Positions 3,272 through 26,014 of a stretch of 64,000 nucleotides of DNA are shown piece by piece. A program made the translations under genes and the position numbers. The stretch lies in IMG/VR virus record IMGVR_UViG_3300032296_003307, positions 62,001 through 126,000 of that record, one strand, 5' to 3'. The notes beneath the pieces were generated by a model. It saw only the letters and a program-made list of their open reading frames with translations. It searched no databases and was not told the DNA's origin. The first letter of the stretch is position 1; every line of letters starts with the position of its first letter.

Positions 3272-3288
3272 TTAATTAAATTGAAGTT

Positions 3289-9775: not shown

Positions 9776-9829
9776 GTTTTTTCATTACTTTTTAATTAGA
9801 ATTAATATATTTATAATAAATGAAAAAAC
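9776..9829 (+). promoter_or_regulatory. Inverted repeat covering the HNH start codon, with the late promoter in the loop
   Basis: GTTTTTTCATT (9776-9786) pairs with AATGAAAAAAC (9819-9829); TATTTATA at 9808-9815. Confidence 0.75.
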
Positions 9830-10410
9830 GAGAACATTACACAGGAAGACCTAAGGGTTTATCCAAAAAATATAAAGAATTAATTTATATAGGGGCTAAA
9901 TTTGGTAGTTGGGAAGTAATTAGTGAAGAAGTAATAAAGAGTAATTACGGTAAAAACACAATTAGATGTAGATGTAGATGTGGTAATGAAAAAAATGTTG
10001 ATGTTTACACATTAGGCAAAGACTCACAAAGTTGTTTTAATTGTGGTCATAACAAAATAGGTTCTGAGCATCAAAATTATAAGGGATATAAAGAAATACC
10101 TCAAAAATGGTTTAGTAGATATACACGTAGAGATAGAGAATGCAATATTAAAATAGAAATGATATATGATTTATGGCTAGAGCAAGATAAAAAATGTGCT
10201 TTAAGTGGAATCCCTATTGACTTTAAAAATACAAACCCAAACCCAAAAAACTATAGATGTAATGCCTCTTTAGATAGAATAGATTCTACAAAAGGTTATA
10301 TAATAGGAAATATACAATTAGTACATAAAGACATTAATAGTATGAAAAGTGATTTTGAACAAAATTACTTTATTAAAATGTGTAAATTAATATCAATAAA
10401 TAATGAATAA
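9820..10410 (+). CDS. His-Me finger (HNH-like) homing endonuclease
   Basis: CRCRCG, CFNCG, CALSG and ASLDRIDSTKGYIIGNIQLVHKDINSMK. Confidence 0.8.
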   Translation: MKKREHYTGRPKGLSKKYKELIYIGAKFGSWEVISEEVIKSNYGKNTIRCRCRCGNEKNVDVYTLGKDSQSCFNCGHNKIGSEHQNYKGYKEIPQKWFSRYTRRDRECNIKIEMIYDLWLEQDKKCALSGIPIDFKNTNPNPKNYRCNASLDRIDSTKGYIIGNIQLVHKDINSMKSDFEQNYFIKMCKLISINNE

Positions 10411-11494
10411 AAAAATATTAGCATGGCTAATTACTTTTTGTGCTTTAGGATTAGGAGGCACAGCAGCTTATTACAGTGTAATAGGTTTGTCTAAAATGTT
10501 TGCTGGAGTTTCAACAGCTGTTATAATTATGGCTAGCTTTTTGGAAATTTCTAAATTGACTTTAGCTACTTTGTTACATACTTATTGGGAACCTTTAAGT
10601 AAACTTTCTAAAATATATTATATAATTTCATTAATTATATTATCTTTAATAACATCAGCAGGAATATACGGAATGCTTAGTAGTGGATACCAAAAAACAG
10701 CAGACCAAACCAGTATTGTTGAATCTAAAATTGCTGCTTTAGAATCTAAAAAGAAATTATTTGAGGAAACCAGAGACAATATTTTAAAAGAAAAACAATC
10801 TATAGCTAATTTACAAGGTAGTTTATCTCAAGCATCTACTACTCAATACACAGATAGAAAAGGTAATCTAGTAGTAAGATCAAATGATGCAGCTATCCGT
10901 AATATTGAATCAGCTTCTAAATCAAATGAAAAACTATCAGCCAAAATTGATGTGGTTAATGATTCTATTTTTTCTATTGAATCTAAAATTCTAGAGGTTA
11001 AAACAACATCAACTGCCGAAAGTGAATTAGGTCCATTAAAATACTTAAGTAAACTTACAGGAATTGCTATGGACCGAATCATTAACTGGTACATATTAGT
11101 TATTATATTTGTGTTTGATCCATTAGCTATTGCTCTTGTTATAGCCGCTAACTTTGCTTTTGCTCAACTTACTAAACGTGATAAAACACCTGTTGAAGAG
11201 CAAGTAGATGATTTAGAAGAGGAAATGAAAGAGTGGGAAGAAGCTAGTTTGACAGATCTTCATATTTTAGAAAAAGAGGAAGAGGAACAAGTTAAAGAAG
11301 AATCTATTGTAGAAAACCATGATACAGAACGTGAAAAAAAGGTAGAGGAATCTTTGGAAAGAATAGAACAAATGACTCATAATATAAACAGTGTGGAATT
11401 TTATAAAAAAGAAGCAACTTTGAATGAAATTCAAAAATTAAGGGAATTTTTAAAATCAAACAATAAAGACGAGGATACTATAACTTATTTTTAA
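10403..11494 (+). CDS. Multi-pass membrane protein with long coiled coil
   Basis: Three N-terminal hydrophobic helices, coiled coil, further TM segment (IFVFDPLAIALVIAA), acidic tail. Confidence 0.75.
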   Translation: MNKKILAWLITFCALGLGGTAAYYSVIGLSKMFAGVSTAVIIMASFLEISKLTLATLLHTYWEPLSKLSKIYYIISLIILSLITSAGIYGMLSSGYQKTADQTSIVESKIAALESKKKLFEETRDNILKEKQSIANLQGSLSQASTTQYTDRKGNLVVRSNDAAIRNIESASKSNEKLSAKIDVVNDSIFSIESKILEVKTTSTAESELGPLKYLSKLTGIAMDRIINWYILVIIFVFDPLAIALVIAANFAFAQLTKRDKTPVEEQVDDLEEEMKEWEEASLTDLHILEKEEEEQVKEESIVENHDTEREKKVEESLERIEQMTHNINSVEFYKKEATLNEIQKLREFLKSNNKDEDTITYF

Positions 11495-11578: not shown

Positions 11579-11809
11579 ATGTTGAATCACGAAATTTATG
11601 AAGCAGAGCAAGAGTACAATAAGTATCAAGAATTGATGTTTGGTAAAGAAATTCTTACTCAAGAAGAGTATGAGTTTTGTTTTTCTTGGGACCATGAAGA
11701 GACTCGTATTTCAACTACTAAAATAGGAGAAGGTCGTTACTTAAACCTTAATGTGTATTCTGAGGTTGAAAAAGAAGAATATGATTTAAGGAGAGAAATG
11801 GGTATATGA
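11579..11809 (+). CDS. Hypothetical protein
   Basis: ATG after promoter and AGTTATG context; the track's upstream extension is unlikely. Confidence 0.6.
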   Translation: MLNHEIYEAEQEYNKYQELMFGKEILTQEEYEFCFSWDHEETRISTTKIGEGRYLNLNVYSEVEKEEYDLRREMGI

Positions 11810-12318
11810 TTACAATTGAAGATTTTTGGGAGTGGAAGTCCACTTATGATCCTGCCCCTCCAAAACCAAATAAAACATACAATAAGTTTTTTTGGTGGAG
11901 GCGTTATCAAGAACACAAGTCACTACCAAAAATGGCCTCTATTTGGGATAAAGCAGCCAATGGTGATTATGATGTTTCACCTTATTGGAAACAACGTGAG
12001 TGGGAGTATTGGTTTGAAGATCAAGAAATTGCTAAATTCAAATCTACTTACACAGGTCATATAGAAAATTTTAGTTGGGCTGAAAGACAAATTACAAAAT
12101 TGTTTTGGGAGCGTAGAAAGCGTTTACTGAATGATGCTGAACGTGATGAATACAATCGTTGGCAATTGCTTATGAAGGATCTTAAAAATAATTTTGGTGG
12201 TAACGAAGATGATATCAAAGCAATGTTTGAATCGTTTGAAGGTACAATGATAGAATTTATCACCGCTTATCGTGATTCAAGAAATCTTCCTAAAATTCAA
12301 CCTCCTCCTAAATTTTAA
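11806..12318 (+). CDS. Hypothetical Trp-rich protein
   Basis: 170-aa ORF coupled to the upstream gene. Confidence 0.65.
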   Translation: MITIEDFWEWKSTYDPAPPKPNKTYNKFFWWRRYQEHKSLPKMASIWDKAANGDYDVSPYWKQREWEYWFEDQEIAKFKSTYTGHIENFSWAERQITKLFWERRKRLLNDAERDEYNRWQLLMKDLKNNFGGNEDDIKAMFESFEGTMIEFITAYRDSRNLPKIQPPPKF

Positions 12319-12354: not shown

Positions 12355-13131
12355 ATGAAAATAAGTCATGAAGTACCTTTATGTTTGCTAGAAGATAGTC
12401 TTTCATTTAACGATTATGATTATGCTTTAGTTCATTTATTAGATAAAGATGAAGACTACGCTAATTTTTTTATAAAAGCAAAACAACAAGGTCGTTATAT
12501 TATTTTAGATAACAGCTTACATGAACTTGGAACAGCATATCATGATTCAGGTCTAATACACTGGGTTGAAAAATTATTACCAAATGAATTTATTGTACCT
12601 GATGTTTGGCAAGATACAACTCAATCAATTGTTAATGCTAGAAAATGGGCACAAATTGAATTACCTAAAGAAGTTACTAAAGTAGCAGTAGTTCAAGCAG
12701 AAAGTTTAACAGGTGCTATGCTTTGTTATCAAACCTATAAAGATTTAGGTTATAAGAAAATAGCATTCTCTTATGGTGCTGATTATTATTTGAATCATTC
12801 ATCTCATCCTAATAAAAATATTGCCAAATCTTTAGGTAGAATTGAGGTAATAAGCAAATTATATAGTATGGGAATCATTTCAAAAAATGATAGAGTACAT
12901 TTATTAGGATGTCAGGTACCACAAGAATTTAGTTGGTATAAAGATATGCCCTTTATCGAAACAATTGATACATCTAATCCTGTTATGGCAACTTTAGATG
13001 GTATTAAATATGGTGAAAATGGTTTGACAGAAAAGCCAAAAGCAAATATGAATGACCATTTTTATACAACAGATATAGATTATGATTTGTTGGATTGGAA
13101 TTTAAAAATGTTTAGAAAATTATTAAAATAA
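12355..13131 (+). CDS. TGT/DpdA-like TIM-barrel base-exchange enzyme, divergent
   Basis: IILDNS, IVPDV, AVVQ, VHLLG and IDTSNP match the order of the TGT-fold D-S-G / H-x-L-G / D-S motifs; upstream of queC-queD-queE-folE. Confidence 0.6.
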   Translation: MKISHEVPLCLLEDSLSFNDYDYALVHLLDKDEDYANFFIKAKQQGRYIILDNSLHELGTAYHDSGLIHWVEKLLPNEFIVPDVWQDTTQSIVNARKWAQIELPKEVTKVAVVQAESLTGAMLCYQTYKDLGYKKIAFSYGADYYLNHSSHPNKNIAKSLGRIEVISKLYSMGIISKNDRVHLLGCQVPQEFSWYKDMPFIETIDTSNPVMATLDGIKYGENGLTEKPKANMNDHFYTTDIDYDLLDWNLKMFRKLLK

Positions 13132-13137
13132 AAGTAT

Positions 13138-13293
13138 ATGAGTAAGTTTGAAAAAATTTTTAACAAAGGTGTTATTATCATCAATGTTTTGGCTGGGCTG
13201 GTTAGTATTATCTGTCACAACTATGTGTTAGGTATGAATCAACTACTTGTGGCTTGGTTTGCATTTTTGTATTACAACGAAAGGAAAAAATAA
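13138..13293 (+). CDS. Small two-TM protein (51 aa)
   Basis: Translated by hand: MSKFEKIFNKGVIIINVLAGLVSIICHNYVLGMNQLLVAWFAFLYYNERKK. Confidence 0.55.
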   Translation: MSKFEKIFNKGVIIINVLAGLVSIICHNYVLGMNQLLVAWFAFLYYNERKK

Positions 13294-13296
13294 GTT

Positions 13297-13509
13297 ATGG
13301 AACAAATGTTATCACTTTTTGATTACCTAGGTTATGCTGCTGGTTCTAAATTAGGTAAAGATGTAGCAAAGGCCGCAGCAGCCGAAAAAGTTGGGTTCCA
13401 AACTAAAATAGTACAAAATCCAGCCTATTCAGGAGAAATAATGATGTATCCAAAATCATTTTTGGATAAATTTTTCAAAGGAGATGTTAACGACGATTTA
13501 CCCTTTTAA
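13297..13509 (+). CDS. Small protein ending in an SSB-like tail DDLPF
   Basis: C-terminus GDVNDDLPF. Confidence 0.65.
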   Translation: MEQMLSLFDYLGYAAGSKLGKDVAKAAAAEKVGFQTKIVQNPAYSGEIMMYPKSFLDKFFKGDVNDDLPF

Positions 13510-13511
13510 TT

Positions 13512-13673
13512 ATGAATACAAAATCACACCCTTCAAAACCAATGAAAGATATTAATTCGGCTTGGGAAGCAGAAATTAAAAAACAATTAGATGCCGTTTG
13601 GGAAAATCGTTTTCGCCTAAGCTTGAATAACCTAGAAACCTTACGTAAATTAGCTAATAAAACAAAAACATGA
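13512..13673 (+). CDS. Small hypothetical protein (53 aa)
   Basis: Translated by hand: MNTKSHPSKP...LANKTKT; stop overlaps the queC stub ATG. Confidence 0.5.
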   Translation: MNTKSHPSKPMKDINSAWEAEIKKQLDAVWENRFRLSLNNLETLRKLANKTKT

Positions 13674-13696
13674 ATAAACAAGCAGTATTGTTTTAA
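13670..13696 (+). pseudogene. Dead 5' stub of queC (MNKQAVLF*)
   Basis: AAACAAGCAGTA shared with the queC start (MNTNKKQAVLS) on the other side of the HNH gene. Confidence 0.7.
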
Positions 13697-13702
13697 AAGT
13701 TT

Positions 13703-13751
13703 ATGTTTTTTTATGGGGGTTATAATATTTATAACCGCCATAAAATTACAT
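13703..13751 (+). promoter_or_regulatory. 23-bp imperfect hairpin upstream of HNH containing the late promoter
   Basis: 13703-13725 pairs with 13729-13751 with 3 mismatches; TATTTATA at 13726-13733 spans loop and 3' arm; ATG at 13756. Confidence 0.75.
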
Positions 13752-13755
13752 TAAT

Positions 13756-14415
13756 ATGCCTAGTAAAGAATATATGAAAGAGTATAGGAGAAATAAAAAT
13801 CCTAAACTCAAAGAAAAAGAAGAACTTGCACAACAAGAAAAAAAACGTTGTACAAAATGTTTAGAAATAAAACCTTTTAATTCTTTCACCCCCCAAAAAG
13901 CAGGATTTATGGGATTAAAATCTCAATGTAAGGAGTGTGATTGTTTATATGATAAACATTTTCAATCTAAAACTAACTTTAGATCAGAACGAGATAAAAC
14001 AGATAAAGCTAAACAATATAGAAAAAATTATGTAGCTGAAAACTTAGACTGGTGGAGAAAATATGAAAGAGAATATAGATATAATCGTAGAAGAGAAGAT
14101 ATGTTTTTTAAAATAAAAGGAAACCTATCAGGACGACTATCTGATTTAATAAATAAAAGAAATTTATCTACTAATACTTTTGAACTTATAGGATGTGATA
14201 GAGAAACTTTTTTACAATATATTGAAAAACAATTTGTAGAAGGAATGACATGGGAAAATTATGGTTTAAAAGGATGGCATATAGATCACATAATTCCTTT
14301 ATCTTCTTTTGATTTAACTAACGAAGATGAAGTAAAGAAAGCATGTTATTATACTAATTTACAACCTCTTTGGTGGGAAGATAATTTAAAAAAAGGAAGT
14401 AAACTTGGAAATTAG
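13756..14415 (+). CDS. HNH homing endonuclease
   Basis: CTKC...CKEC zinc ribbon; WHIDHIIPLSSF...NLQPLWWEDNLKK. Confidence 0.88.
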   Translation: MPSKEYMKEYRRNKNPKLKEKEELAQQEKKRCTKCLEIKPFNSFTPQKAGFMGLKSQCKECDCLYDKHFQSKTNFRSERDKTDKAKQYRKNYVAENLDWWRKYEREYRYNRRREDMFFKIKGNLSGRLSDLINKRNLSTNTFELIGCDRETFLQYIEKQFVEGMTWENYGLKGWHIDHIIPLSSFDLTNEDEVKKACYYTNLQPLWWEDNLKKGSKLGN

Positions 14416-14439
14416 AAAAAGATTTATTATATTAATATT

Positions 14440-15318
14440 ATGAACACAAATAAAAAACAAGCAGTACTTAGCCTCTCAGGAGGATTAGATTCAAGTACTT
14501 TATTATTACATTTGTTAGCTAATGGGTATGAGGTTTGTGCCCTTTCTTTTGATTACGGACAAAAACACTCAGTTGAACTTGAACGTGCTAAAGAATTAGT
14601 AAATTATCTTAACCAAGAACAAGATTATCAATTGTCCTATATTGAATCTAAATTTAGCAAAATTAAATATCAAGTAATTAAACTTGATGGTTTATCTCAA
14701 TTACTTAATTCAGCACTTGTAACTGGTGGAGCAGAAGTTCCTGAAGGACACTATGCTGAAGAAAATATGAAAGCAACAGTTGTTCCTAATCGTAATAAAA
14801 TCTTTAGTTCAATTATTCAATCCGTTGCTTTATCAATTGCTAATGAAACTAAAGAAGAAGTTAAAATTGCTTTAGGGGTACACAGCGGTGATCATAGTAT
14901 TTACCCAGATTGTACTGAAGATTGGAGATCAGCAGATGAACATGCTTTTAAGGTAGGTAACTGGGATTCACATTTGGTAAATTATTATACTCCATATATG
15001 GAAGGAAACAAATTTACTATTTTACAAGATGGAGAAAAATGTTGTGAACAACTAGGTCTTGATTTTGATGCAGTATACAAACGTACTAATACATCTTACA
15101 AACCAATCAAACATGTAATTTTTTATGATGATGAAACCTCAAGTGAAGAATGGTTTTCTGATTACAAATCAGCATCTTCAGTAGAGCGAGTAGAGGCATT
15201 TATAAAATTAGGTAGAAAAGATGCTGTATCTTATGCTGACGAATTCGGACCAGTAACTTGGGAATTTGTAAAAGAGTACGTATCTTCCGTGTTAGATGAG
15301 TATCAGAAGACAATATAA
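14440..15318 (+). CDS. queC: 7-cyano-7-deazaguanine (preQ0) synthase
   Basis: SLSGGLDS PP-loop, FDYGQKH, VVPNRN, YPDC. Confidence 0.92.
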   Translation: MNTNKKQAVLSLSGGLDSSTLLLHLLANGYEVCALSFDYGQKHSVELERAKELVNYLNQEQDYQLSYIESKFSKIKYQVIKLDGLSQLLNSALVTGGAEVPEGHYAEENMKATVVPNRNKIFSSIIQSVALSIANETKEEVKIALGVHSGDHSIYPDCTEDWRSADEHAFKVGNWDSHLVNYYTPYMEGNKFTILQDGEKCCEQLGLDFDAVYKRTNTSYKPIKHVIFYDDETSSEEWFSDYKSASSVERVEAFIKLGRKDAVSYADEFGPVTWEFVKEYVSSVLDEYQKTI

Positions 15319-15511
15319 AAAATCAAAACCATTTCCTCAAATGTATGTAATACTTAACAAGTATGGACAAGTATTTACAGGAATGAAAAAAGGTTATATC
15401 CAATGGTCAGACAATTGGCTAGAGGCTAAACCTTTATTCGAAGAAAATACTACATTATTACTACAAGAAAACAAAGGAGCAGAACTAATTAAAGAAGAAG
15501 AATTAATATGA
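15296..15511 (+). CDS. Hypothetical protein
   Basis: 71-aa ORF overlapping both neighbours. Confidence 0.55.
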   Translation: MSIRRQYKKSKPFPQMYVILNKYGQVFTGMKKGYIQWSDNWLEAKPLFEENTTLLLQENKGAELIKEEELI

Positions 15512-15753
15512 AACAAATATTTTATTTTACAGCAGACTGGTGTCAACCCTGCCAATCATTAGGACCAATTATGGCTAAAGTAGCCCAACAAATACCTGTT
15601 GAAAAAATCAATATTGATTATGAAGCAGATAGAACAAAAGCAGCAAATGTAATGAGTGTTCCTACTGTTGTTTTGGCTCAAAACGGACAGGAACTTCGTC
15701 GATTTGTTGGTGTTAGAAGTTTTGAACAAATAATGCAATTTATCAATGGGTAG
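15508..15753 (+). CDS. Thioredoxin-family protein
   Basis: WCQPC active site, SVPT cis-Pro loop. Confidence 0.85.
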   Translation: MKQIFYFTADWCQPCQSLGPIMAKVAQQIPVEKINIDYEADRTKAANVMSVPTVVLAQNGQELRRFVGVRSFEQIMQFING

Positions 15754-16210
15754 TTTTAGATCAACAAAAGTATTTGATGGTTACTCAACAGTATTCCGTC
15801 AATGGAAAGCAGAAGGAACACATTGTAGGTTTCTTCATGGCTATGGAGTAAGTTTAAAGGTGTGGTTTGAAGGTGAACTTGATGAACGTAATTGGGTTTG
15901 GGATTTTGGAGGTATGAAACGCGCTAAAGGAACTATTGATGGTATGAATCCTAAAGCATGGTTAGATTATATGCTTGATCATACTACAATTGTAGCCGAA
16001 GATGATCCATATTTAGAAAGTTTCCAACTAATGGAAGAAAATGAACTCATCCAACTTCGTATCATTCCAGCTACAGGAGCAGAACGTTTTGCTGAATATT
16101 TTTATAATAAACTAAATGATTTTGTTCAAGCAGAAACAGAAGGTCGAGTTAAAGTAGTACAAGTTGAATTTAGAGAACACGAGAAAAACACAGCATTTTA
16201 TAAAGGATAA
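15746..16210 (+). CDS. queD: 6-carboxytetrahydropterin synthase-like (QueD/PTPS) variant
   Basis: HCRFLHGY, WVWDFGG, LDHTT, GAERFAE, FREHEKN. Confidence 0.78.
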   Translation: MGSFRSTKVFDGYSTVFRQWKAEGTHCRFLHGYGVSLKVWFEGELDERNWVWDFGGMKRAKGTIDGMNPKAWLDYMLDHTTIVAEDDPYLESFQLMEENELIQLRIIPATGAERFAEYFYNKLNDFVQAETEGRVKVVQVEFREHEKNTAFYKG

Positions 16211-16212
16211 TT

Positions 16213-17025
16213 ATGGATAGTAAAGTAACAGAAAAACAATGGTTAATTGAAGAACCAGGTCGTATTGAAGATTATAATAAAAAACTCCCAATACTTGAAA
16301 TTTATACCTGTGTACAATCAGAGGGTTCAAGACAAGGTCGTCCAACAGTAGCAGTTAGGGTAACAGGTTGTACTCATAGATGCTGGTTTGGTGCCGGAGG
16401 TTGGTGTGATTCTTGGTACACAAGTATTCATCCTGAAAAAGGTATTTACTGTTTTAATGACATTGTTAAAATATATGATGAAAATCCTCATATTAAGGAA
16501 ATGATGTTAACAGGTGGTTCCCCTACTATGCAACCAGCATTGGTTAATGAGTTGACTCGTTTTGCCTATAAAAGAGGTATTTTGATTACTATTGAAACCG
16601 AAGGTTCTCACTTTATTAAAACAGATTTTCCTATTGGTTTAATTTCTTTAAGCCCTAAATTCAGCAATTCAATTCCTAAAATTGATGTTAATACTCCTAT
16701 GGGAAAATTGGTTGACCAAAAAATGATTGATCAACATGAAAAGTTCCGTTTAAATAAAGAGGTAATGAAAATGATGATGGAATACCATACTGAATATCAT
16801 TTTAAACCTGTATGGGATGGAACAGAGGAAAACCTGGCTGAAATTGAGGCATTCAGAGTTGAAATGAATATTCCAAAATGGAAAACTTGGTTGATGCCTG
16901 CTGGTGATACTAGAGAAACTCTAATTGAAATGTATCCTATCTCAATTGAAAAATGTATGGAAATGGGTTACAACTGGACTGGTAGAGATCACATTATTGC
17001 TTACGATACTAAGAGAGCCGTTTAA
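16213..17025 (+). CDS. queE: 7-carboxy-7-deazaguanine synthase, radical SAM
   Basis: VQSEG, CTHRC-x7-C cluster motif, TGGSP, IETEG, SLSPK. Confidence 0.88.
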   Translation: MDSKVTEKQWLIEEPGRIEDYNKKLPILEIYTCVQSEGSRQGRPTVAVRVTGCTHRCWFGAGGWCDSWYTSIHPEKGIYCFNDIVKIYDENPHIKEMMLTGGSPTMQPALVNELTRFAYKRGILITIETEGSHFIKTDFPIGLISLSPKFSNSIPKIDVNTPMGKLVDQKMIDQHEKFRLNKEVMKMMMEYHTEYHFKPVWDGTEENLAEIEAFRVEMNIPKWKTWLMPAGDTRETLIEMYPISIEKCMEMGYNWTGRDHIIAYDTKRAV

Positions 17026-17426
17026 TGGATCTACTCTCAACTCATCCAGTCAAAAAATTAGATTTAGGTTTCCACGGCAATCTATTCGGAGGTAAATTAC
17101 TCTCCTGGATAGATGCCGCGGTTGCCGCTTATGCTATGGAAAAATGTAGAAGCCAAAACATGATTACTGTAGCAATGGACAGATGTGTTTTTAAAAAACC
17201 AGCCAAAGAAAAAAATCTAGTTAAAATTTATGCTGATGTTTTGAAAATAGGAAACACATCAGCTACTTTTAGGGTAGAGGCAAGAGCATACAATGTTTTT
17301 AGAGGTGATGAAGTTACATTATTAGAAACAAGCATGACTTTTGTAAGAGTAGATGACGAAGGAGCTCCTATATCCATTTCCCAAACAGTAAAAGACAAAT
17401 ACAAAATTCCTGAATCTAAACTTTAA
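17025..17426 (+). CDS. Hotdog-fold acyl-CoA thioesterase (YciA-like)
   Basis: DLGFHGNLFGGKLLSWID, FKKP, IGNTS, MTFVRVD. Confidence 0.8.
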   Translation: MDLLSTHPVKKLDLGFHGNLFGGKLLSWIDAAVAAYAMEKCRSQNMITVAMDRCVFKKPAKEKNLVKIYADVLKIGNTSATFRVEARAYNVFRGDEVTLLETSMTFVRVDDEGAPISISQTVKDKYKIPESKL

Positions 17427-17439
17427 TATTTATTAAAAA

Positions 17440-17685
17440 ATGAAACCAAAATTAACTTATTTTTATAGCGATACCTGCCCCAAATGCAGTGAATTAGAAC
17501 CCCTAGTAAAAGAATTAGAACAATTATTTGAAATTACTTATGTAGATACTTACGAAGATGATCTACTTACAGAATCAAACAACATTGAATGGATTCCTAC
17601 ATTTGTGTTGGAAGATAAAGATGGAAAACATAAATTTGAAGGCGCAAAACAAATTAAAGAGTTTTTAAGAAAAATCATTTCATGA
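17440..17685 (+). CDS. Thioredoxin/glutaredoxin-like protein
   Basis: CPKC motif, WIPT. Confidence 0.7.
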   Translation: MKPKLTYFYSDTCPKCSELEPLVKELEQLFEITYVDTYEDDLLTESNNIEWIPTFVLEDKDGKHKFEGAKQIKEFLRKIIS

Positions 17686-18182
17686 TACTATTTACAGAAA
17701 AAGAAATCCAAAACAAAGTAGGAGAGATTGCCTACAACCTTAAAAAAAGACATCACGAGGAACCTCCTGTGTTTATATGCGTTTTAAACGGCGCTTTCAT
17801 GTTTTTTACGGACTTGGTGAAACACATGGAAGATTGCCATATAGACTTTATACGCGCGAAATCTTACGAAGGAACCACACAGGGTGAAATATACATTACC
17901 AAACAAATAGAAAGTGATATTACTGGAAAAGATGTTTATTTGGTTGATGATATCTATGATTCAGGTAATACTATGAATCGTTTGATAAAAAACATTAGTT
18001 ATGGTAATCCAAAATCAATTACCCCAGTAACATTGTTTAAAAGACATACCTCCAAAAACCCTGATCTAATTTATGGTTTTGATTTAGAAAATGAATACTT
18101 TTTAGTGGGTTATGGTTTGGATGGAGAAAATGATTTAAAAAGGAACCAAAAATACATCACTGGTATAATGAGTGAAGATTAA
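17682..18182 (+). CDS. hpt: Hypoxanthine/guanine phosphoribosyltransferase
   Basis: CVLNGAFMFFTDL, KSYEG, PRPP loop VYLVDDIYDSGNT, FLVGYGLD. Confidence 0.88.
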   Translation: MILFTEKEIQNKVGEIAYNLKKRHHEEPPVFICVLNGAFMFFTDLVKHMEDCHIDFIRAKSYEGTTQGEIYITKQIESDITGKDVYLVDDIYDSGNTMNRLIKNISYGNPKSITPVTLFKRHTSKNPDLIYGFDLENEYFLVGYGLDGENDLKRNQKYITGIMSED

Positions 18183-18224
18183 TTTTAATTTGGTTTTTAT
18201 AAAAAATATTATTATATTATTGTT

Positions 18225-18959
18225 ATGACTATTGAAAATAAAAGAAGAAAAATTATTGATGTAGAAAAACTTGAACTGGCTCAACCTGGTTTTGCTAATG
18301 GTATTTCACTTCAGTTAGACAAAGTAATTAAAAATGGTGAACACCGTTCACTTACTGAAAATGAAAAATACGATATCATTGACAAAGCAGAAAAAGCATA
18401 TGGTGAGTTTTTAGATGCTTTAGGTGTTGATTGGAGAAACGATCCCAATTCAATGGAAACTCCTCGTCGTGTAGCAAAGGCTTATGTACTGGATTTGTGG
18501 AAAGGTCGTTATGATGTTCCTACTGAAATTACTGCTTTCCCAGCAGATGGTTACAATGGAATTATTTTAGAAAGAGATATTCCTATTGTAAGTATGTGTT
18601 CACACCACCACCAAGCTATTTTAGGAAAAGCCCACGTTGCTTATGTTCCTGGAAAAGATGGTAAGGTAATTGGATTGAGTAAATTGAACCGAATTGTAGA
18701 ACATTATGCTCGTAGAGGTGCTATTCAAGAACAACTTACAGTTGCTATTCACAATGCAATTAATGAAGTATGTGAAGGCAATATTGGAGTAATGGTTGTA
18801 GTTCATTCATTCCACAATTGTGTTTCATGTCGTGGTATTAAACATTTTGGAGCATCAATGGTTACAAGTGAAGTATCAGGTGTATTTGCTGACCACACCA
18901 AAACAGCAAAACAAGAAGTTATGGATATGTTAAAATTTAATATGGAGGGTTACAGATGA
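18225..18959 (+). CDS. folE: GTP cyclohydrolase I
   Basis: ETPRRVAK, SMCSHHH, GLSKLNR, IQEQLT, HNCVSCRG. Confidence 0.93.
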   Translation: MTIENKRRKIIDVEKLELAQPGFANGISLQLDKVIKNGEHRSLTENEKYDIIDKAEKAYGEFLDALGVDWRNDPNSMETPRRVAKAYVLDLWKGRYDVPTEITAFPADGYNGIILERDIPIVSMCSHHHQAILGKAHVAYVPGKDGKVIGLSKLNRIVEHYARRGAIQEQLTVAIHNAINEVCEGNIGVMVVVHSFHNCVSCRGIKHFGASMVTSEVSGVFADHTKTAKQEVMDMLKFNMEGYR

Positions 18960-19459
18960 TCCTAAACGCAGAACAACTTTTGGAACAAGGTCTAATAATT
19001 TTAGATGATGCCAAAGGTAAACCAGCACAAGTTGGTTATGATTTATCAATTAAAGAAGTTAATAAAGTAGGAGGTGAAATTGGAAGAGTTTTAAAAGACA
19101 AAACCATTGTAAACAAACATACTCCTGTTGAAAAAACTAGTTTGGAAGGTAAAAAAGGCTGGATACTATATCAGGGAGTTTATGATGTAATTATGAATGA
19201 AGGCTGTGATATTCATCCTGACAGAGTAGGACTAATTCGCCAACGTTCTTCTTTGATGAGAAACGGAGCAATTATTACCTCAAGTATTTTTGATCCTGGT
19301 TTTAAAACAGCAAATGTAGGAACTTACATGATTGTTTTTGAAACTATTTTTATTGAAGAGGATGCTCGAGTTGCTCAAATGTATTTCCACGAGTGTGAAC
19401 CAGTAAGCAAAGATCAGCTTTATAACGGTCAGTTCCAAAACGATAAACAAAGAGGTTAA
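18956..19459 (+). CDS. dCTP deaminase / trimeric dUTPase superfamily
   Basis: VGYDL, RSSLMRNG, FDPGF, RVAQ. Confidence 0.78.
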   Translation: MILNAEQLLEQGLIILDDAKGKPAQVGYDLSIKEVNKVGGEIGRVLKDKTIVNKHTPVEKTSLEGKKGWILYQGVYDVIMNEGCDIHPDRVGLIRQRSSLMRNGAIITSSIFDPGFKTANVGTYMIVFETIFIEEDARVAQMYFHECEPVSKDQLYNGQFQNDKQRG

Positions 19460-20194: not shown

Positions 20195-22789
20195 ATGTAT
20201 CAAGCAGTTTACTTTGATAGAGAGGAAAAACAATATTATCTAAGAGACGACAGATGGAAAGGTTTTAAAACAGTTCAACATTGGCCTACTCTTTATGTTG
20301 CTGATCCTGATGGTGACTTTGAAACACTAGAAGGTACCAAAGTATCCCCTGTTAAAAGAATGGATGATTGGAAAGATCCTAGATACTTTGAAAAAGACGT
20401 AGACAAACTTACTCGCTTACTTGTTGATTACTATTATGAATCTGATGATACACCAAAGTTTCATAATACAGTTTATTTAGATATTGAGTGTGAAATTGCC
20501 GGAGCATTAACTGAGGAAACAATTAAAGATCCTAAAGGTAAAATAACTGCTGTTGCTCTTTATGATGCTAATTCTAAAAAATATTATTGTTTACTTTTAG
20601 ATGAAAGTAAAACCTTTAAAGACATTGTTGAAGAAGATAAAGAGGTTATACCCTATGCCACTGAAAAAGAATTATTAAGTGGTTTTTTAGACAAATGGTA
20701 TGAATTAGACCCAACTATTATTACAGGTTGGAACAGTGGTTTCTTTGATATTCCTTACCTATACTATAGAATTTCTAAAGTATTAGGTGAAACACTTGCT
20801 CAAACCCTATCTCCAATAGGAAAAATTCAATTCACCCCCCAATTTCCAGATCAACCTGTTAATTTAGGAGGTATTAACCATCTTGACTATATGCTTTTGT
20901 TTAAAAAGTTTATTACAAAACAAGAGTCATCTTATCGTTTAGGTGATATTGGTAAAAAATATGCTAAATTAGAAAAAATAGAGTATCAAGGTTCACTTGA
21001 TAAATTATTTAAAGAAGATATTCATACATTTATTGAATATAACCTTCGAGACGTTGAAATTATTGTTGAGCTTGAAAAACGAATGAAGTTTATCGAACTA
21101 ACAGTTACAATTGGTCATTTATGTCATACAACTTACGAATCGATTTACTTTTCAACAGTATTAAATGAAGGTGCTATTTTAACTTACCTAAAACGTAAAG
21201 GAATAGTTTCACCTAATAAACCAACTACCTATAATCCAGCTCTAAAAACATTACAAGAGGAATATGCTGGTGGTTATTTGAAAGATCCTGTTCCTGGTTT
21301 ATATGAATGGGTTATTGATTTGGATTTTACATCTTTGTATCCCTCTATTATTCGTTCACTTAATATGGGAATTGAAACATTAGTTGGACGTGTTGTAAAC
21401 AGAGGTAAATTTGATAATCAATGGTCACTTAAAGAACTTAAAGCAATGAACCCTAGTACTATGGTTACTATTGAAAAAGTTAAAAAAGATCGTAGATTAG
21501 CCCAATCAGAAATTTCAGTAGGTGATTTAATAGAAATTATTGAAGGTAATGATTTAATTATTTCAGCACCCGGTGTTATGTTCCGTAAAGACAAATCAAG
21601 TGTTGTTTGTGAAATTCTAGCTGACTGGTTTGCTAAACGTCAAGAATATAAAAAGTTGATGAAAAAGGCATATAAAGAAGATAACGACCCTGTTATGGGA
21701 TCCTTTTATGATAGACGTCAACATGCTTATAAAATTAAATTAAATGATGTTTATGGTGTATTTGCAATTAATGGTTGGAGATACACTGATGGAAACAAAT
21801 TCATTAGTAAAGCAATTACTTTAACAGGTCAGCGCTTAACTCAAGAATCTATTAAGTTTGTAAACAATTGGATGAATGAGCAATTAGGTACAGACAATAA
21901 AGATTACATTGTTACCTCAGATACCGACTCATTATTCATTCAGGTTAAAGATTTAATTTTACAACGTAAACCTGAATTAGCTACAGCAGATCAAGAAACA
22001 ATTGTACAAGAGGTACTTAAAGTTGCTACTGAAATTCAAAAATTAGCAAATGAAAATCTACATACCATAGTACAAGAATTATTTAATGTTAAATACCCTA
22101 ATGAACCTCACTATTTTGAATTAAAACAAGAGGTTGTACTTGATAGAGGTTATTTTGCTGGTAAGCGTAGATACGCCCAACACATTGTTAATAAAGAAGG
22201 TGTACCAACAGATGAACTAGATGTTAAAGGATTGGATTTGATGAAATCAAATTTCCCACCATTGTTTAAAAAGTTTGGTGAACACATTATTAATGAAATT
22301 ATGTTTGGTAAACCTAAAACAGATATTGATAAACAAATACTTGATTTTAGAACCGAATTAAGAACAATTAATTGGAAACAAATTCTAAAACCTACTGGAT
22401 TAAAGAAAATGGGTGAATATTTGGCTTCACCTCCTAGAGCAGGTGAGGTATTTTCAAAATTAGGATTAAAATGTCCTATTAATACCAAAGCAGCTATTTA
22501 CTATAATGATATTTTAACTTTTAAAGGTTTAGATAAAAAATATCCAACATTCCAAATAGGTGATAAAATGTATATTGCTTATTTAAAAGATAATCCTTAT
22601 AGAATAGATGTTGTTGGTTTTAACGGATTTAATGACCCTCCTGAGGTAATGGAATTTATAGAAAAATACATTGATAGAGACGGTTTATTTGATTCAGTTA
22701 TGAAAAACAAATTAGAGTCATTATATTCAGATCTAGGATGGGGTGCTGTAGTACTCAATCAAAACATAAACAAGTTTTTTAAATTTTAA
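20195..22789 (+). CDS. polB: Family-B replicative DNA polymerase
   Basis: Exo I YLDIECE, Exo II GWNSGFFD, DLDFTSLYPS, KIKLNDVYG, SDTDS, KRRY. Confidence 0.95.
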   Translation: MYQAVYFDREEKQYYLRDDRWKGFKTVQHWPTLYVADPDGDFETLEGTKVSPVKRMDDWKDPRYFEKDVDKLTRLLVDYYYESDDTPKFHNTVYLDIECEIAGALTEETIKDPKGKITAVALYDANSKKYYCLLLDESKTFKDIVEEDKEVIPYATEKELLSGFLDKWYELDPTIITGWNSGFFDIPYLYYRISKVLGETLAQTLSPIGKIQFTPQFPDQPVNLGGINHLDYMLLFKKFITKQESSYRLGDIGKKYAKLEKIEYQGSLDKLFKEDIHTFIEYNLRDVEIIVELEKRMKFIELTVTIGHLCHTTYESIYFSTVLNEGAILTYLKRKGIVSPNKPTTYNPALKTLQEEYAGGYLKDPVPGLYEWVIDLDFTSLYPSIIRSLNMGIETLVGRVVNRGKFDNQWSLKELKAMNPSTMVTIEKVKKDRRLAQSEISVGDLIEIIEGNDLIISAPGVMFRKDKSSVVCEILADWFAKRQEYKKLMKKAYKEDNDPVMGSFYDRRQHAYKIKLNDVYGVFAINGWRYTDGNKFISKAITLTGQRLTQESIKFVNNWMNEQLGTDNKDYIVTSDTDSLFIQVKDLILQRKPELATADQETIVQEVLKVATEIQKLANENLHTIVQELFNVKYPNEPHYFELKQEVVLDRGYFAGKRRYAQHIVNKEGVPTDELDVKGLDLMKSNFPPLFKKFGEHIINEIMFGKPKTDIDKQILDFRTELRTINWKQILKPTGLKKMGEYLASPPRAGEVFSKLGLKCPINTKAAIYYNDILTFKGLDKKYPTFQIGDKMYIAYLKDNPYRIDVVGFNGFNDPPEVMEFIEKYIDRDGLFDSVMKNKLESLYSDLGWGAVVLNQNINKFFKF

Positions 22790-23532: not shown

Positions 23533-23555
23533 TTAAATATATTTATTATAAAGTT

Positions 23556-23750
23556 ATGGGTTTTGAATTAATTAAGGTTGGTGACGACTTATATACAGTT
23601 GAGCGTAAAATTTCTGAAAATACAGGAATTGATACAAATCTTTACAAAGGATACACAAACACAACAAACGTATTTAGAAAAGATGGCAAATTTTGGTTTT
23701 GTCGTCTTATTGAAGAAGCACAAGTTATTGAAGAAAATTTGGAAAATTAA
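23556..23750 (+). CDS. Hypothetical protein
   Basis: ORF with upstream TATTTATT. Confidence 0.55.
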   Translation: MGFELIKVGDDLYTVERKISENTGIDTNLYKGYTNTTNVFRKDGKFWFCRLIEEAQVIEENLEN

Positions 23751-23773
23751 AAAATATTTCATATATTCCCGTT

Positions 23774-24397: not shown

Positions 24398-26014
<1,617 letters not shown>

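What the first reader, a model, noticed from the sequence alone, without database searches (positions are those of the whole stretch)
12355..19459. 7-deazaguanine DNA-modification cluster with unusual accessory genes
Seen: a TGT/DpdA-like gene, queC, queD, queE and folE, with no queF, Gat-QueC or arcS in the window. Interleaved are a phosphoribosyltransferase, a hotdog thioesterase, two thioredoxins and a dCTP deaminase/dUTPase. Known: FolE-QueD-QueE-QueC make preQ0 from GTP, and DpdA-type enzymes exchange it into DNA as an anti-restriction mark. Inference: the DNA carries dPreQ0 or a further derivative made by the extra genes.
Basis: partly seen in the sequence, partly recalled or inferred. 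Interest (0 to 1): 0.7.

Follow-up and report, generated by a model that had tools for sequence, protein, structure and literature searches.

The report
DpdA3-type 7-deazaguanine DNA replacement cluster
A large uncultured T4-like phage carries a known kind of gene set (DpdA3 type) that makes the guanine look-alike preQ0 and puts it into the phage DNA in place of G; the extra genes are nucleotide-pool enzymes, and together with a linked kinase they suggest the swap may happen before replication, not after as published.

Summary
Window 12355-19459 encodes, all on the + strand, a DpdA3-family transglycosylase, QueC, QueD, QueE and FolE. Among them lie two thioredoxins, a hotdog thioesterase, an HGPRT-type phosphoribosyltransferase and a dCTP-deaminase/dUTPase-like enzyme. 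T4-type PolB follows directly.

The whole 268.7-kb genome has no QueF, ArcS, DpdL or DpdN, so the predicted base is preQ0. The gene order is conserved in 80 IMG/VR relatives.

The closest characterised systems are the DpdA3 phages immuto_2-6A, CP220 and phiST, all of which replace 100% of G. The kind is therefore known.

What is new:
- The accessory genes are not tailoring enzymes. HGPRT sits in a conserved QueE-PRTase-FolE slot, and I infer it recycles the displaced guanine.
- The FolE-to-polymerase slot holds either a dUTPase-like or a MazG-like pyrophosphatase, never both.
- A (deoxy)nucleoside/nucleotide-kinase-like P-loop protein lies next to DpdA3 in 53 of 59 diverse loci. In this genome it sits 51 kb away, beside a COG2509 flavoprotein.

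I favour, at about 45%, base exchange on a dG nucleotide before replication. Post-replicative DNA exchange, the published but untested proposal, gets about 35%. Interest is moderate to high as a testable challenge to that proposal.

The parts
7315..9171 (+). Class II (B12-type) ribonucleotide reductase, 618 aa. It is context: the likely client of the two thioredoxins.
   Evidence: PF02867 and the RNR-II insertion domain; phrog_367 1.3e-126; the only RNR hit in the genome.
10403..11494 (+). Conserved phage-only protein of unknown function, 363 aa, upstream of DpdA3.
   Evidence: Found in 72 of 82 compared loci. No Pfam, PHROG or PDB hit. Only viral unnamed clusters in the Atlas. Not related to CP220 gp055.
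11806..12318 (+). Conserved unknown 170-aa protein directly upstream of DpdA3.
   Evidence: Found in 52 of 82 loci. No family hit.
12355..13131 (+). DpdA3-family guanine/7-deazaguanine transglycosylase. It is a minimal TGT-fold TIM barrel of 258 aa with no Zn subdomain.
   Evidence: tblastn 36-39% identity to immuto DpdA and CP220 gp056. 1472 cluster representatives in a 1.8-billion-protein library. AF2 pLDDT 97.8. Foldseek top 50 are all TGT, E about 1e-7. The family profile aligns D205 and L184 with the Asp256 nucleophile and Leu236 of bacterial DpdA 7ui4. Invariant D52 and D205; no conserved Cys.
13138..13673 (+). Three small ORFs (51, 70 and 53 aa), partly conserved, function unknown.
   Evidence: Found in 6, 39 and 21 of 82 loci respectively.
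13756..14415 (+). HNH/endonuclease VII-like homing endonuclease. It is an insertion, not part of the pathway.
   Evidence: phrog_1035 5.7e-20. Absent from all 82 compared loci.
14440..15318 (+). QueC (7-cyano-7-deazaguanine synthase), a 292-aa variant that lacks the canonical C-terminal Cys4 zinc site.
   Evidence: PF06508 130 bits, PP-loop SGGLDSS. Alignment to the PDB QueC structures stops before the zinc region. Only C158 and C202 are conserved among 49 homologues. 64% identical to immuto QueC, and that phage makes a preQ0-derived base.
15296..15511 (+). Conserved 71-aa protein of unknown function between QueC and thioredoxin A.
   Evidence: Found in 32 of 82 loci. No family hit.
15508..15753 (+). 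Thioredoxin A, 81 aa, WCQPC motif. It is a core gene of this lineage's cluster.
   Evidence: PF00085 59.7 bits. A thioredoxin is present in 25 of 25 relatives with a complete QueC-to-PolB stretch. The CxxC motif is conserved.
15746..16210 (+). QueD (6-carboxytetrahydropterin synthase), CxxxHGY variant.
   Evidence: PF01242 57 bits. It is the only PTPS-family gene in the genome. The same motif type is found in immuto and phiST QueD.
16213..17025 (+). QueE (7-carboxy-7-deazaguanine synthase, radical SAM).
   Evidence: phrog_2076 5.5e-49. Several NCBIfam QueE models match below their cut-offs. 77% DNA identity to immuto queE.
17025..17426 (+). YciA-like hotdog (4HBT) thioesterase. It is accessory and its role is unknown.
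   Evidence: PF03061 63 bits. 59% identical to immuto gp50. Found in 17 of 82 loci. Lies next to HGPRT in the distant locus L263. A second copy sits at genome 182452-182877.
17440..17685 (+). Thioredoxin B, 81 aa, TCPKC motif. Accessory.
   Evidence: PF00085 37 bits. Found in 22 of 82 loci.
17682..18182 (+). HGPRT-type purine phosphoribosyltransferase, 166 aa.
   Evidence: TIGR01203 123 bits, below its 150-bit cut-off. Full-length alignment to HGXPRT 1hgx (1e-26), with the PRPP loop and the FLVGYGLD motif. Present in 36 of 38 relatives with enough flank. A PRTase also fills the QueE-FolE slot in other DpdA3 clades.
18225..18959 (+). FolE (GTP cyclohydrolase I), the first step from GTP.
   Evidence: PF01227 151 bits. 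NF006826 157 bits.
18956..19459 (+). DCD/dUTPase-superfamily (d)NTP pyrophosphatase, 167 aa, overlapping FolE by 4 bp. Specificity unknown.
   Evidence: PF22769 49 bits, PF00692 22 bits. PRK02253 83 bits, below its cut-off. In relatives the same slot holds either this fold or a MazG-like enzyme, never both. A separate canonical dUTPase lies at genome 259232-259633.
20195..22789 (+). T4 gp43-type family B DNA polymerase. It would have to copy, and possibly incorporate, the modified base.
   Evidence: PF00136 and PF03104. The best cultured relative is only 33% identical. Follows the cluster in the window's relatives.

Best explanation
This is a DpdA3-type system that replaces guanine in the phage genome with a 7-deazaguanine, here most likely preQ0 (7-cyano-7-deazaguanine). 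Each step below is marked as shown or inferred.

1. FolE, QueD, QueE and QueC convert GTP to the free base preQ0. The enzyme families are shown by homology. The end point is inferred from the genome-wide absence of QueF, ArcS, DpdL and DpdN.

2. The minimal TGT-fold enzyme DpdA3 exchanges guanine for preQ0 at the glycosidic bond through its conserved Asp pair. The fold and residues are shown. The activity has never been shown for any DpdA3.

3. I think the exchange most likely happens on a free deoxyguanosine nucleotide or nucleoside rather than on finished DNA. In this view the pyrophosphatase next to FolE (DCD/dUTPase-like here, MazG-like in relatives) turns dGTP into dGMP and empties the dGTP pool. 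DpdA3 swaps the base. The DpdA3-linked P-loop kinase, here at genome 23503-24033, rephosphorylates the product. PolB then builds DNA with no G. This step is inferred from gene linkage. I give it about 45%.

4. In either version one free guanine is released per exchange. The HGPRT-type enzyme returns it, with PRPP, to GMP and so to GTP, the substrate of FolE. This closes a loop. It is inferred.

5. The two thioredoxins most simply serve the class II ribonucleotide reductase 3 kb upstream. This is inferred.

Identity as a DpdA3 7-deazaguanine DNA system is about 0.9. The stated confidence of 0.45 refers to the whole mechanism, including the nucleotide-level step.
For: Identity:
- Searches give the pathway enzymes.
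- Searches show that DpdA3 has the TGT fold, the nucleophile Asp aligned with bacterial DpdA, and homologues in CP220, immuto and phiST.
- Searches show synteny in 80 relatives.

End point: searches find no QueF, DpdL, DpdN or ArcS in 268.7 kb. The QueC type is shared with immuto, which makes a preQ0-derived base.

Complete replacement in DpdA3 phages: PMC10516641.

Nucleotide-level route:
- A P-loop protein lies next to DpdA3 in 53 of 59 diverse IMG/VR loci and in 12 of 15 DpdA3 clusters at 60% identity. It is also adjacent in CP220, immuto, Bacillus phage BSTP8 and the contigs L092, L095 and L178.
- The window genome keeps a homologue of this protein (1e-15 to 1e-18).
- Its family profile best matches deoxynucleoside kinase, NadR ribosylnicotinamide kinase, deoxyguanosine kinase and thymidylate kinase.
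- The FolE-to-polymerase slot holds a DCD/dUTPase-like or a MazG-like pyrophosphatase, with both present in 0 of 73 loci. phiST and immuto have a MazG-type enzyme beside FolE.
- The window genome has a separate canonical dUTPase.
- The ADG nucleoside was reported in the cytoplasm of CP220-infected cells (cited in PMC10516641).
- DpdA3 expressed in E. coli did not modify DNA.
- From general knowledge: the well-studied complete base replacements I know of (T4 hmC, S-2L 2-aminoadenine, PBS1 dU) are made at the nucleotide level and include removal of the canonical dNTP.

HGPRT: full-length match to HGXPRTs with intact PRPP and purine motifs. Present in 36 of 38 relatives. A PRTase occupies the same QueE-FolE slot in other clades and in immuto, and phiST encodes one elsewhere.
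Against: - No member of the TGT/DpdA superfamily is known to act on a mononucleotide; all characterised ones act on tRNA or DNA. The authors who defined DpdA3 propose post-replicative exchange.
- In this genome and its lineage the kinase is not near DpdA3 (0 of 38 loci).
- The kinase family also occurs in about 89 Streptomyces phages with no DpdA3 hit.
- The pyrophosphatase may simply be the housekeeping dUTPase. Three relatives with the MazG slot have no other PF00692 dUTPase hit (the MazG-like slot enzyme is their only candidate), and in two with the DCD slot the slot enzyme is the only PF00692 hit. Both folds include true dUTPases.
- 14 of 35 and 9 of 38 loci show no pyrophosphatase within reach.
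- CP220 has no PRTase.
- The complex prediction for DpdA3 plus kinase gave no answer.
- No chemistry was measured. The base, its level in DNA and every substrate are inferred.
Confidence: 0.45

Rival explanations
1. Post-replicative exchange, the published proposal. The phage replicates with ordinary dGTP. DpdA3 then removes every G from duplex DNA and inserts preQ0. The P-loop protein is either an ATPase helper analogous to bacterial DpdB or an unrelated thymidylate kinase. The pyrophosphatase is the ordinary dUTPase. HGPRT still recycles the released guanine.
For: All characterised DpdA/TGT enzymes act on polynucleotides. Bacterial DpdA needs the ATPase DpdB to insert preQ0 into DNA (PMC10164549). 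The DpdA3 active-site residues match those of DNA-acting DpdA. Cui et al. propose this route. In relatives the slot pyrophosphatase is the only dUTPase-family enzyme found. The kinase is not clustered with DpdA3 in the window's lineage.
Against: Complete replacement with no detectable dG is hard to reach by exchange on finished DNA; this is my inference. DpdA3 alone gave no DNA modification in E. coli. DpdA3 lacks the extra subdomains of the larger DNA- and tRNA-acting relatives: it has 258 aa and no conserved Cys. The linked P-loop family resembles small-molecule nucleoside and nucleotide kinases.
Confidence: 0.35
2. Ribonucleotide route, like toyocamycin and tubercidin biosynthesis. The HGPRT homologue attaches preQ0 (or CDG) to PRPP to give a 7-deaza-GMP. 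A kinase makes the diphosphate or triphosphate. The class II ribonucleotide reductase, fed by the two thioredoxins, makes the deoxy form, and PolB incorporates it. DpdA3 would have a secondary role, such as correcting residual G.
For: HGPRT sits between QueE and FolE in 36 of 38 relatives, and a PRTase fills the same slot in other clades. The class II RNR and two thioredoxins are in the same gene block. From memory, not tested here: ToyH and TubE are HGPRT-like enzymes that phosphoribosylate 7-deazaguanine bases in Streptomyces.
Against: This route leaves the universally conserved DpdA3 without a necessary role. CP220 has no PRTase, and about half of the diverse DpdA3 loci that contain QueE and FolE lack one. 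The enzyme keeps the standard HGPRT motifs, including the acidic loop that in HGPRTs contacts N7; I read that residue's role from memory. No similarity to ToyH or TubE was tested.
Confidence: 0.1
3. The pathway feeds tRNA queuosine or the host's preQ0 pool rather than DNA, acting as an auxiliary metabolic gene set.
For: FolE, QueD, QueE and QueC are also the bacterial queuosine precursor pathway (established knowledge).
Against: The genome has no QueF and no TGT, and both are needed for bacterial queuosine. The cluster is headed by a DpdA3 homologue and is syntenic with clusters of phages whose DNA is fully modified. It lies inside the replication module, next to the polymerase.
Confidence: 0.03

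Closest known systems
[quoted passage not shown] 2023, PMC10516641)
   Same: DpdA3 is 36% identical, QueC 64%, QueD 70%, QueE 63%, FolE 62% and the hotdog thioesterase 59%. Both have the Zn-less QueC type with a thioredoxin nearby. Both have a PRTase between QueE and FolE and an NTP pyrophosphatase after FolE. Both clusters end at a DNA polymerase.
   Different: immuto has QueF, the DpdN formyltransferase and the kinase directly beside DpdA3. Its PRTase is a short 131-aa type rather than HGPRT-like, its pyrophosphatase is MazG-like, and its polymerase is family A. The window genome has none of QueF or DpdN, so a different end product is expected. Its kinase lies 51 kb away.
Campylobacter phage CP220 (Firehammervirus; dADG, 100% of G)
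   Same: It has a DpdA3 homologue of 38% identity (gp056) with the homologous P-loop kinase (gp057) directly downstream. It is also a T4-like myovirus.
   Different: Its genes are scattered rather than in one operon. It has no PRTase. Its synthesis is reported to stop at CDG and the DNA carries dADG. An HD/P-loop protein lies upstream of DpdA3 and is unrelated to the window's upstream gene.
Cellulophaga phage phiST (dDG, 100% of G)
   Same: It has QueD-QueE-FolE, then a MazG/dUTPase-like pyrophosphatase, then DpdA3, lying before the polymerase genes according to the paper. It shares the CxxxHGY QueD type. A PRTase is encoded elsewhere in its genome.
   Different: It has no QueC. It has the QueD paralogue DpdL, the proposed CDG decarboxylase. 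Its DpdA3 is only about 22% identical.
Bacterial Dpd system (DpdA/DpdB/DpdC, Salmonella Montevideo; PMC10164549)
   Same: It has the TGT-fold transglycosylase, with the same nucleophile Asp and stacking Leu aligned, and preQ0 as the inserted base.
   Different: Bacterial DpdA has 400+ aa, needs the ATPase DpdB, modifies fewer than 0.1% of G at a sequence motif, and belongs to a restriction-modification system. DpdA3 has 258 aa, has no DpdB or DpdC homologue nearby, and is associated with complete replacement.
Pre-replicative base-replacement pathways: T4 (dCTPase gp56, dCMP hydroxymethylase gp42, dNMP kinase gp1) and cyanophage S-2L (MazZ, PurZ, DatZ; PMC8342488)
   Same: They are working analogues only. 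Each combines a pyrophosphatase that removes the canonical dNTP and supplies the monophosphate, an enzyme that changes the base at the monophosphate level, a kinase, and a polymerase gene nearby. The same set of activities is linked to DpdA3.
   Different: None of the base-changing enzymes is homologous to DpdA3. Base exchange on a nucleotide by a TGT-fold enzyme has no precedent. The T4 comparison rests on my own knowledge.

Membership tests
TGT/DpdA transglycosylase superfamily | TIM-barrel TGT fold | tested here: met
   AF2 model pLDDT 97.8, pTM 0.93. The Foldseek PDB top 50 are all tRNA-guanine or archaeosine transglycosylases, E 7e-8 to 1e-6, TM by query 0.61-0.69.
TGT/DpdA transglycosylase superfamily | Nucleophile Asp (bacterial DpdA Asp256) and base-stacking Leu236 | tested here: met
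   The family profile aligns HLLG...SIDTSNP with 7ui4 residues 254-279 (20-residue tag offset). This puts invariant D205 on Asp256 and invariant L184 on Leu236. The profile E-value is only 0.024.
TGT/DpdA transglycosylase superfamily | General acid/base Asp (Asp95), gate Phe (Phe99) and Watson-Crick-edge Asp (Asp130) | tested here: inconclusive
   Invariant D52 with F56 four residues later, and nearly invariant D83, fit the Asp95/Phe99/Asp130 pattern. However, no residue-level structural alignment was available.
TGT/DpdA transglycosylase superfamily | Match to Pfam TGT model PF01702 | tested here: not met
   No hit in the protein or in the whole genome at E up to 1. The same holds for other DpdA3 proteins, which were recognised only by HHpred.
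TGT/DpdA transglycosylase superfamily | C-terminal zinc-binding subdomain of TGTs | tested here: not met
   The protein has 258 aa against about 370-580 aa for TGTs. No conserved Cys is found among 72 family members.
DpdA3 subfamily (Cui et al. 2023) | Sequence kinship with phiST CGPG_00065, CP220 gp056 and immuto gp65 | tested here: met
   tblastn E 6e-45 (immuto), 8e-41 (CP220), 1e-4 (phiST). All lie in one tree with 133 environmental representatives.
DpdA3 subfamily (Cui et al. 2023) | Co-encoded 7-deazaguanine synthesis genes | tested here: met
   FolE, QueD, QueE and QueC lie in the same operon.
DpdA3 subfamily (Cui et al. 2023) | Complete replacement of dG in virion DNA | not testable with these tools
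   This needs LC-MS/MS of virion DNA. The genome is a metagenomic record.
DpdA3 subfamily (Cui et al. 2023) | DNA-guanine transglycosylase activity | not testable with these tools
   It has never been demonstrated for any DpdA3; heterologous tests failed.
preQ0 pathway (FolE-QueD-QueE-QueC) | All four enzyme families present above family thresholds | tested here: met
   FolE 151 bits against a 27-bit cut-off, QueD 57 against 22.4, QueC 130 against 22. QueE matches only by PHROG (5.5e-49) and by sub-threshold NCBIfam QueE models.
preQ0 pathway (FolE-QueD-QueE-QueC) | Canonical QueC Cys4 zinc site and QueD CxxxHGH motif | tested here: not met
   The QueC clade keeps only C158 and C202. QueD has CxxxHGY. 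Both variants are shared with immuto and/or phiST, which do make 7-deazaguanines, so they are probably active.
Hypoxanthine-guanine phosphoribosyltransferase | Equivalog-level match, PRPP loop and purine-binding motifs | tested here: inconclusive
   TIGR01203 gives 123 bits, below its 150-bit cut-off. The protein aligns over its full length to HGXPRT and Hpt structures (1e-26 to 1e-22), with VDDIYDSGNT and FLVGYGLD conserved. Base specificity was not tested.
Trimeric dUTPase / dCTP deaminase superfamily | Family match; specificity for dUTP | tested here: inconclusive
   PF22769 gives 49 bits against a 27-bit cut-off. PF00692 gives 22.1 against 22. PRK02253 gives 83 against 130. Superfamily membership is met. 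The substrate is unknown, and a stronger canonical dUTPase (84.7 bits) exists elsewhere in the genome.
Toyocamycin/tubercidin-type 7-deazapurine nucleotide pathway (ToyH/TubE) | PRTase that accepts preQ0 or CDG | not tested
   No ToyH or TubE sequence was available from a tool. The resemblance is recalled from memory and is only a lead.

The most novel reading that the evidence does not exclude
DpdA3 is not a DNA transglycosylase. It would be the first TGT-fold enzyme to exchange the base of a free deoxyguanosine nucleotide or nucleoside. Together with a dGTP-clearing pyrophosphatase, a dedicated kinase and a guanine-recycling PRTase, it would form a pre-replicative pathway that lets many aquatic, Campylobacter and Bacillus phages build DNA with no guanine at all. 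[quoted passage not shown] A COG2509 flavoprotein linked to DpdA3 and the kinase in basal clades, and present in this genome, could be an additional, unknown step.
Probability: 0.4. Interest if true: 0.85.

Novelty: new variant of a known kind. Interest (0 to 1): 0.6.

Why it matters
DpdA3 phages are the only known viruses that remove guanine from their DNA completely. How they do so has never been shown; the enzyme failed in heterologous tests.

This window belongs to a very abundant uncultured aquatic lineage. IMG/VR holds 419 relatives of its DpdA3, and thousands of metagenomic proteins match the linked flavoprotein.

Its gene content, compared with 160 loci, yields a concrete and testable gene set: a pyrophosphatase, DpdA3, a kinase and a PRTase. 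This gene set points to synthesis of the modified nucleotide before replication.

If that is right, it changes how 7-deazaguanine genomes are understood. It would give a route to enzymatic synthesis of 7-deaza-dGTP analogues, and it would explain why DpdA3 alone is inactive in E. coli.

If it is wrong, the cluster is still a new DpdA3 variant. Its predicted product, a genome in which dPreQ0 fully replaces dG, has not been reported.

Tried and rejected
- Pfam TGT (PF01702) on the protein and on the whole genome gave nothing, and phmmer against the PDB gave nothing. DpdA3 is too divergent, and only profile, fold and tblastn evidence worked.
- I tested whether the conserved upstream 363-aa gene matches the HD/P-loop protein upstream of CP220 DpdA3. 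There is no similarity. No PDB, PHROG or Atlas lead emerged.
- The idea that a second QueD paralogue (DpdL) or QueF hides in the genome was rejected. The apparent two classes of QueD identity among relatives are two subtypes with the same CxxxHGY motif, not QueD versus DpdL.
- I tested whether the cluster's dUTPase-like enzyme cannot be the housekeeping dUTPase. This is only half supported. The window genome has a second canonical dUTPase, but five relatives do not. I therefore do not use it as strong evidence.
- The kinase is not exclusive to DpdA3 phages: about 89 Streptomyces phages have a homologue.
- The complex prediction for DpdA3 plus kinase gave no answer. It is not evidence either way.
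- A single-protein scan with a distant DpdA3 (P0086) returned only 2 loci. The alignment-based scan was needed.
- Literature searches found no paper in the held library that connects a phosphoribosyltransferase, a dGTPase or a pre-replicative route to phage 7-deazaguanines. Crippen et al. 2019 on CP220 was not in the library and is cited only through PMC10516641.
- An association of thioredoxin with the Zn-less QueC is seen in the window lineage, in immuto and in L223. These are too few independent events to build on.
- I did not use sequencing-read tools, because short reads or contigs cannot reveal the modification.

Full report
**1. What is there**

The window is bases 62001-126000 of a 268,739-bp IMG/VR virus record that CheckV rates as complete. 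GC content is about 31%.

Bases 12355-19459 hold a run of + strand genes with small gaps or overlaps:
- a 258-aa protein
- three small ORFs
- an HNH/endonuclease VII gene
- QueC
- a 71-aa ORF
- thioredoxin A
- QueD
- QueE
- a hotdog thioesterase
- thioredoxin B
- an HGPRT-like phosphoribosyltransferase
- FolE
- a dCTP-deaminase/dUTPase-like protein

The family assignments come from Pfam, PHROGs and NCBIfam.

The block lies inside the replication module. Upstream are a gp32-like protein, a RecA-like protein, a 5'-3' exonuclease, a DnaB-type helicase and a class II ribonucleotide reductase. Downstream are a T4 gp43-type PolB and a chaperonin.

The genome also encodes a T4-type portal and terminase. 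Its polymerase is at most 33% identical to that of any cultured phage. It is therefore a distant T4-like jumbo phage with no cultured relative.

**2. The DpdA-like gene**

The 258-aa protein has no Pfam, NCBIfam or PDB sequence hit. The Pfam TGT model finds nothing anywhere in the genome. Other evidence nevertheless places it in the DpdA3 family.

- It is 36% identical to the annotated DNA-guanine transglycosylase of Flavobacterium phage immuto_2-6A. It is 37-39% identical to a conserved protein of Campylobacter firehammerviruses (CP220 gp056) and about 22% identical to phiST CGPG_00065. These three proteins are the founding members of the DpdA3 subfamily (PMC10516641).
- A full HMMER scan of 1.8 billion representative proteins finds 1472 family clusters.
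- With a 72-sequence alignment, AlphaFold gives a model with pLDDT 97.8. Its 50 best PDB matches are all tRNA-guanine or archaeosine transglycosylases.
- The family profile weakly hits bacterial DpdA (7ui4, E 0.024). The alignment places the invariant D205 and L184 on the experimentally essential nucleophile Asp256 and the stacking Leu236.
- Invariant D52 followed by F56, together with D83, fits the Asp95/Phe99/Asp130 pattern. I could not confirm this by superposition.
- There is no conserved cysteine. The zinc subdomain of the larger relatives is therefore missing.

**3. The pathway and its end point**

FolE, QueD, QueE and QueC make preQ0 from GTP. That is established biochemistry.

QueC here belongs to a clade without the Cys4 zinc site. 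QueD has CxxxHGY instead of CxxxHGH. The same variants occur in immuto and/or phiST, whose DNA does contain 7-deazaguanines, so I take them to be active.

The genome contains no QueF, no second QueD paralogue (DpdL), no DpdN formyltransferase, no ArcS/DUF5591 and no amidotransferase-fused QueC. The predicted base is therefore preQ0.

Complete replacement by dPreQ0 has not been reported. Known DpdA3 phages carry dADG, dDG or fdPreQ1.

**4. Conservation**

Eighty IMG/VR loci whose DpdA3 is 60-86% identical share this order: 363-aa unknown, (170-aa unknown), DpdA3, QueC, Trx, QueD, QueE, (hotdog), (Trx), HGPRT, FolE, pyrophosphatase, PolB.

The HNH gene at 13756-14415 is absent from all of them, so it is a mobile insertion.

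A second set of 80 diverse DpdA3 loci, 41-52% identical to a distant member, has this core order: QueD, QueE, (PRTase), FolE, (MazG), DpdA3, (DpdN), kinase, QueF, (QueC), (DCD/dUTPase). These loci sit next to PolB or Pol III alpha genes.

**5. The accessory genes**

*(a) HGPRT.* The protein aligns over its full length with solved HGXPRT and Hpt enzymes (1e-26). The PRPP loop and the FLVGYGLD purine motif are intact.

It is present in 36 of 38 relatives with enough flanking sequence. A PRTase, either a short type or the HGPRT type, occupies the same QueE-FolE slot in roughly half of the diverse loci and in immuto. phiST encodes one elsewhere and CP220 has none.

Whatever DpdA3's substrate is, every exchange frees one guanine. 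A guanine PRTase would return it to GMP and GTP, the substrate of FolE. This is inference, but it explains the gene's position and needs no unusual specificity.

*(b) Pyrophosphatase.* The slot between FolE and the polymerase holds one of two unrelated folds.

| Loci with enough flank | DCD/dUTPase-like | MazG-like | Both | Neither |
|---|---|---|---|---|
| Window lineage (38) | 16 | 13 | 0 | 9 |
| Diverse set (35) | 7 | 14 | 0 | 14 |

They show displacement of one fold by another in the same place, so the needed function is (d)NTP pyrophosphohydrolysis.

Whether the substrate is dUTP (housekeeping) or dGTP is open. The window genome has a separate canonical dUTPase, but five relatives have none other than the slot enzyme.

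*(c) Thioredoxins.* Thioredoxin A is present in all complete relatives. A class II reductase, a thioredoxin client, lies 3 kb upstream. That is the simplest role.

A thioredoxin also lies near the Zn-less QueC in immuto and in locus L223, and never near zinc-type QueC genes. The independent cases are too few to draw a conclusion.

*(d) Hotdog thioesterase.* It is YciA-like. It is optional in relatives (17 of 82 loci) and is shared with immuto and with L263, where it again precedes HGPRT. I have no supported role for it.

**6. A second module outside the window**

The P-loop protein that sits directly beside DpdA3 in the following places has a homologue in this genome at 23503-24033, which is 51 kb upstream of DpdA3:
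- CP220 (gp057)
- immuto (gp68)
- Bacillus phage BSTP8 (gp008)
- contigs L092, L095 and L178

In the diverse set this protein is adjacent to DpdA3 in 53 of 59 loci, and in 12 of 15 DpdA3 clusters at 60% identity. Its family profile best matches deoxynucleoside kinase, NadR ribosylnicotinamide kinase, deoxyguanosine kinase and thymidylate kinase.

In this genome it follows an 82-aa ORF and a 452-aa COG2509/PF21688-type FAD protein. Homologues of that FAD protein lie between DpdA3 and the kinase in L095, and by position in L178.

The kinase family also occurs in Streptomyces phages that show no DpdA3 hit.

**7. Mechanism**

The published view is that DpdA3 exchanges bases on replicated DNA. This has never been shown, and expression in E. 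coli failed.

Several observations together resemble the logic of the T4 hmC and S-2L 2-aminoadenine pathways:
- the tight linkage of a nucleoside/nucleotide-kinase-like protein
- the pyrophosphatase slot
- the PRTase
- the position next to whichever polymerase the phage uses
- complete replacement of G
- the reported ADG nucleoside in infected cells
- the small size of DpdA3

I therefore favour the following route, at about 45%: dGTP is converted to dGMP, the base is exchanged on the nucleotide, the product is rephosphorylated, and the polymerase incorporates it. Guanine is recycled by HGPRT.

The main rival, at about 35%, is exchange on DNA. In that model the P-loop protein would be a helper analogous to DpdB, which bacterial DpdA requires.

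A ribonucleotide route like that of toyocamycin (HGPRT acting on preQ0, then the reductase) gets about 10%. It leaves DpdA3 unexplained. A tRNA role gets about 3%.

The complex prediction for DpdA3 with the kinase gave no answer.

**8. Verdict**

It belongs to a known kind, the DpdA3 7-deazaguanine systems.

It is a new variant in three respects:
- its end point (preQ0, with no tailoring enzymes)
- its accessory set (HGPRT-type PRTase, two thioredoxins, DCD-type pyrophosphatase)
- its split architecture (the kinase and flavoprotein lie elsewhere in the genome)

They look like nucleotide-pool enzymes.

The comparative pattern gives a testable alternative to the post-replicative model for all DpdA3 phages.

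Noticed in passing
outside the window: genome 21855-24033 (locus L096:4856-7034): A COG2509/PF21688-type FAD-dependent dehydrogenase (452 aa), an 82-aa ORF and an AAA_28 P-loop kinase (176 aa). The kinase is homologous to the gene beside DpdA3 in CP220, immuto, BSTP8 and many metagenomic loci. The flavoprotein is homologous to the ORF between DpdA3 and the kinase in L095, and an ORF sits at the same position in L178. The flavoprotein family is very abundant in aquatic viromes (at least 7972 hits).
   Followed up: partly
window 13756-14415 and 9820-10410; also L096:4206-4847: Two HNH/endonuclease VII-like genes and a GIY-YIG/NUMOD1 gene, probably homing endonucleases. The one at 13756-14415 splits the DpdA3-QueC interval and is absent from all 82 compared loci. 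The one at 9820-10410 is found in only 3.
   Followed up: partly
window 14440-15318 with 15508-15753; L264:1293-1556 and 3108-3989; L223: The QueC clade without the Cys4 zinc site has a thioredoxin within 1.5 kb in 60 of 63 relatives. One lies 33 bp away in L223 and about 1.5 kb away in immuto. None of 16 zinc-type QueC genes in other DpdA3 loci has one. This may be a functional link, or only shared ancestry.
   Followed up: partly
outside the window: genome 259232-259633 (-), locus L265: A second, canonical trimeric dUTPase (PF00692, 84.7 bits). Five smaller relatives (136-170 kb) lack it.
   Followed up: partly
outside the window: genome 182452-182877 (-), locus L097: A second copy of the hotdog thioesterase. 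It scores slightly higher against immuto gp50 (1.6e-54) than the copy in the cluster does (2.3e-50).
   Followed up: no
window 24404-26014 and 19528-20130: A GroEL-type chaperonin (PF00118, 236 bits) lies a few genes after PolB. The 200-aa ORF between the dUTPase-like gene and PolB has a weak GroES-PHROG hit (6e-4) and is found in only 2 of 82 relatives.
   Followed up: no
loci L092 (1272-1685) and L178 (6204-9982): Other DpdA3 clusters carry possible new tailoring genes. L092 has a GNAT acetyltransferase in the slot where DpdN sits, which could point to an acetylated preQ1. L178 has DDAH-like, PS-decarboxylase-like and DUF5591 (ArcS core) genes, with a Pol III alpha polymerase.
   Followed up: no
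relatives G001-G005 (contigs of L053, L041, L036, L080, L006): Relatives that share the cluster are rated 83-100% complete at only 136-170 kb; one has terminal repeats. The 268.7-kb genome of the window is therefore an enlarged member of the lineage.
   Followed up: no
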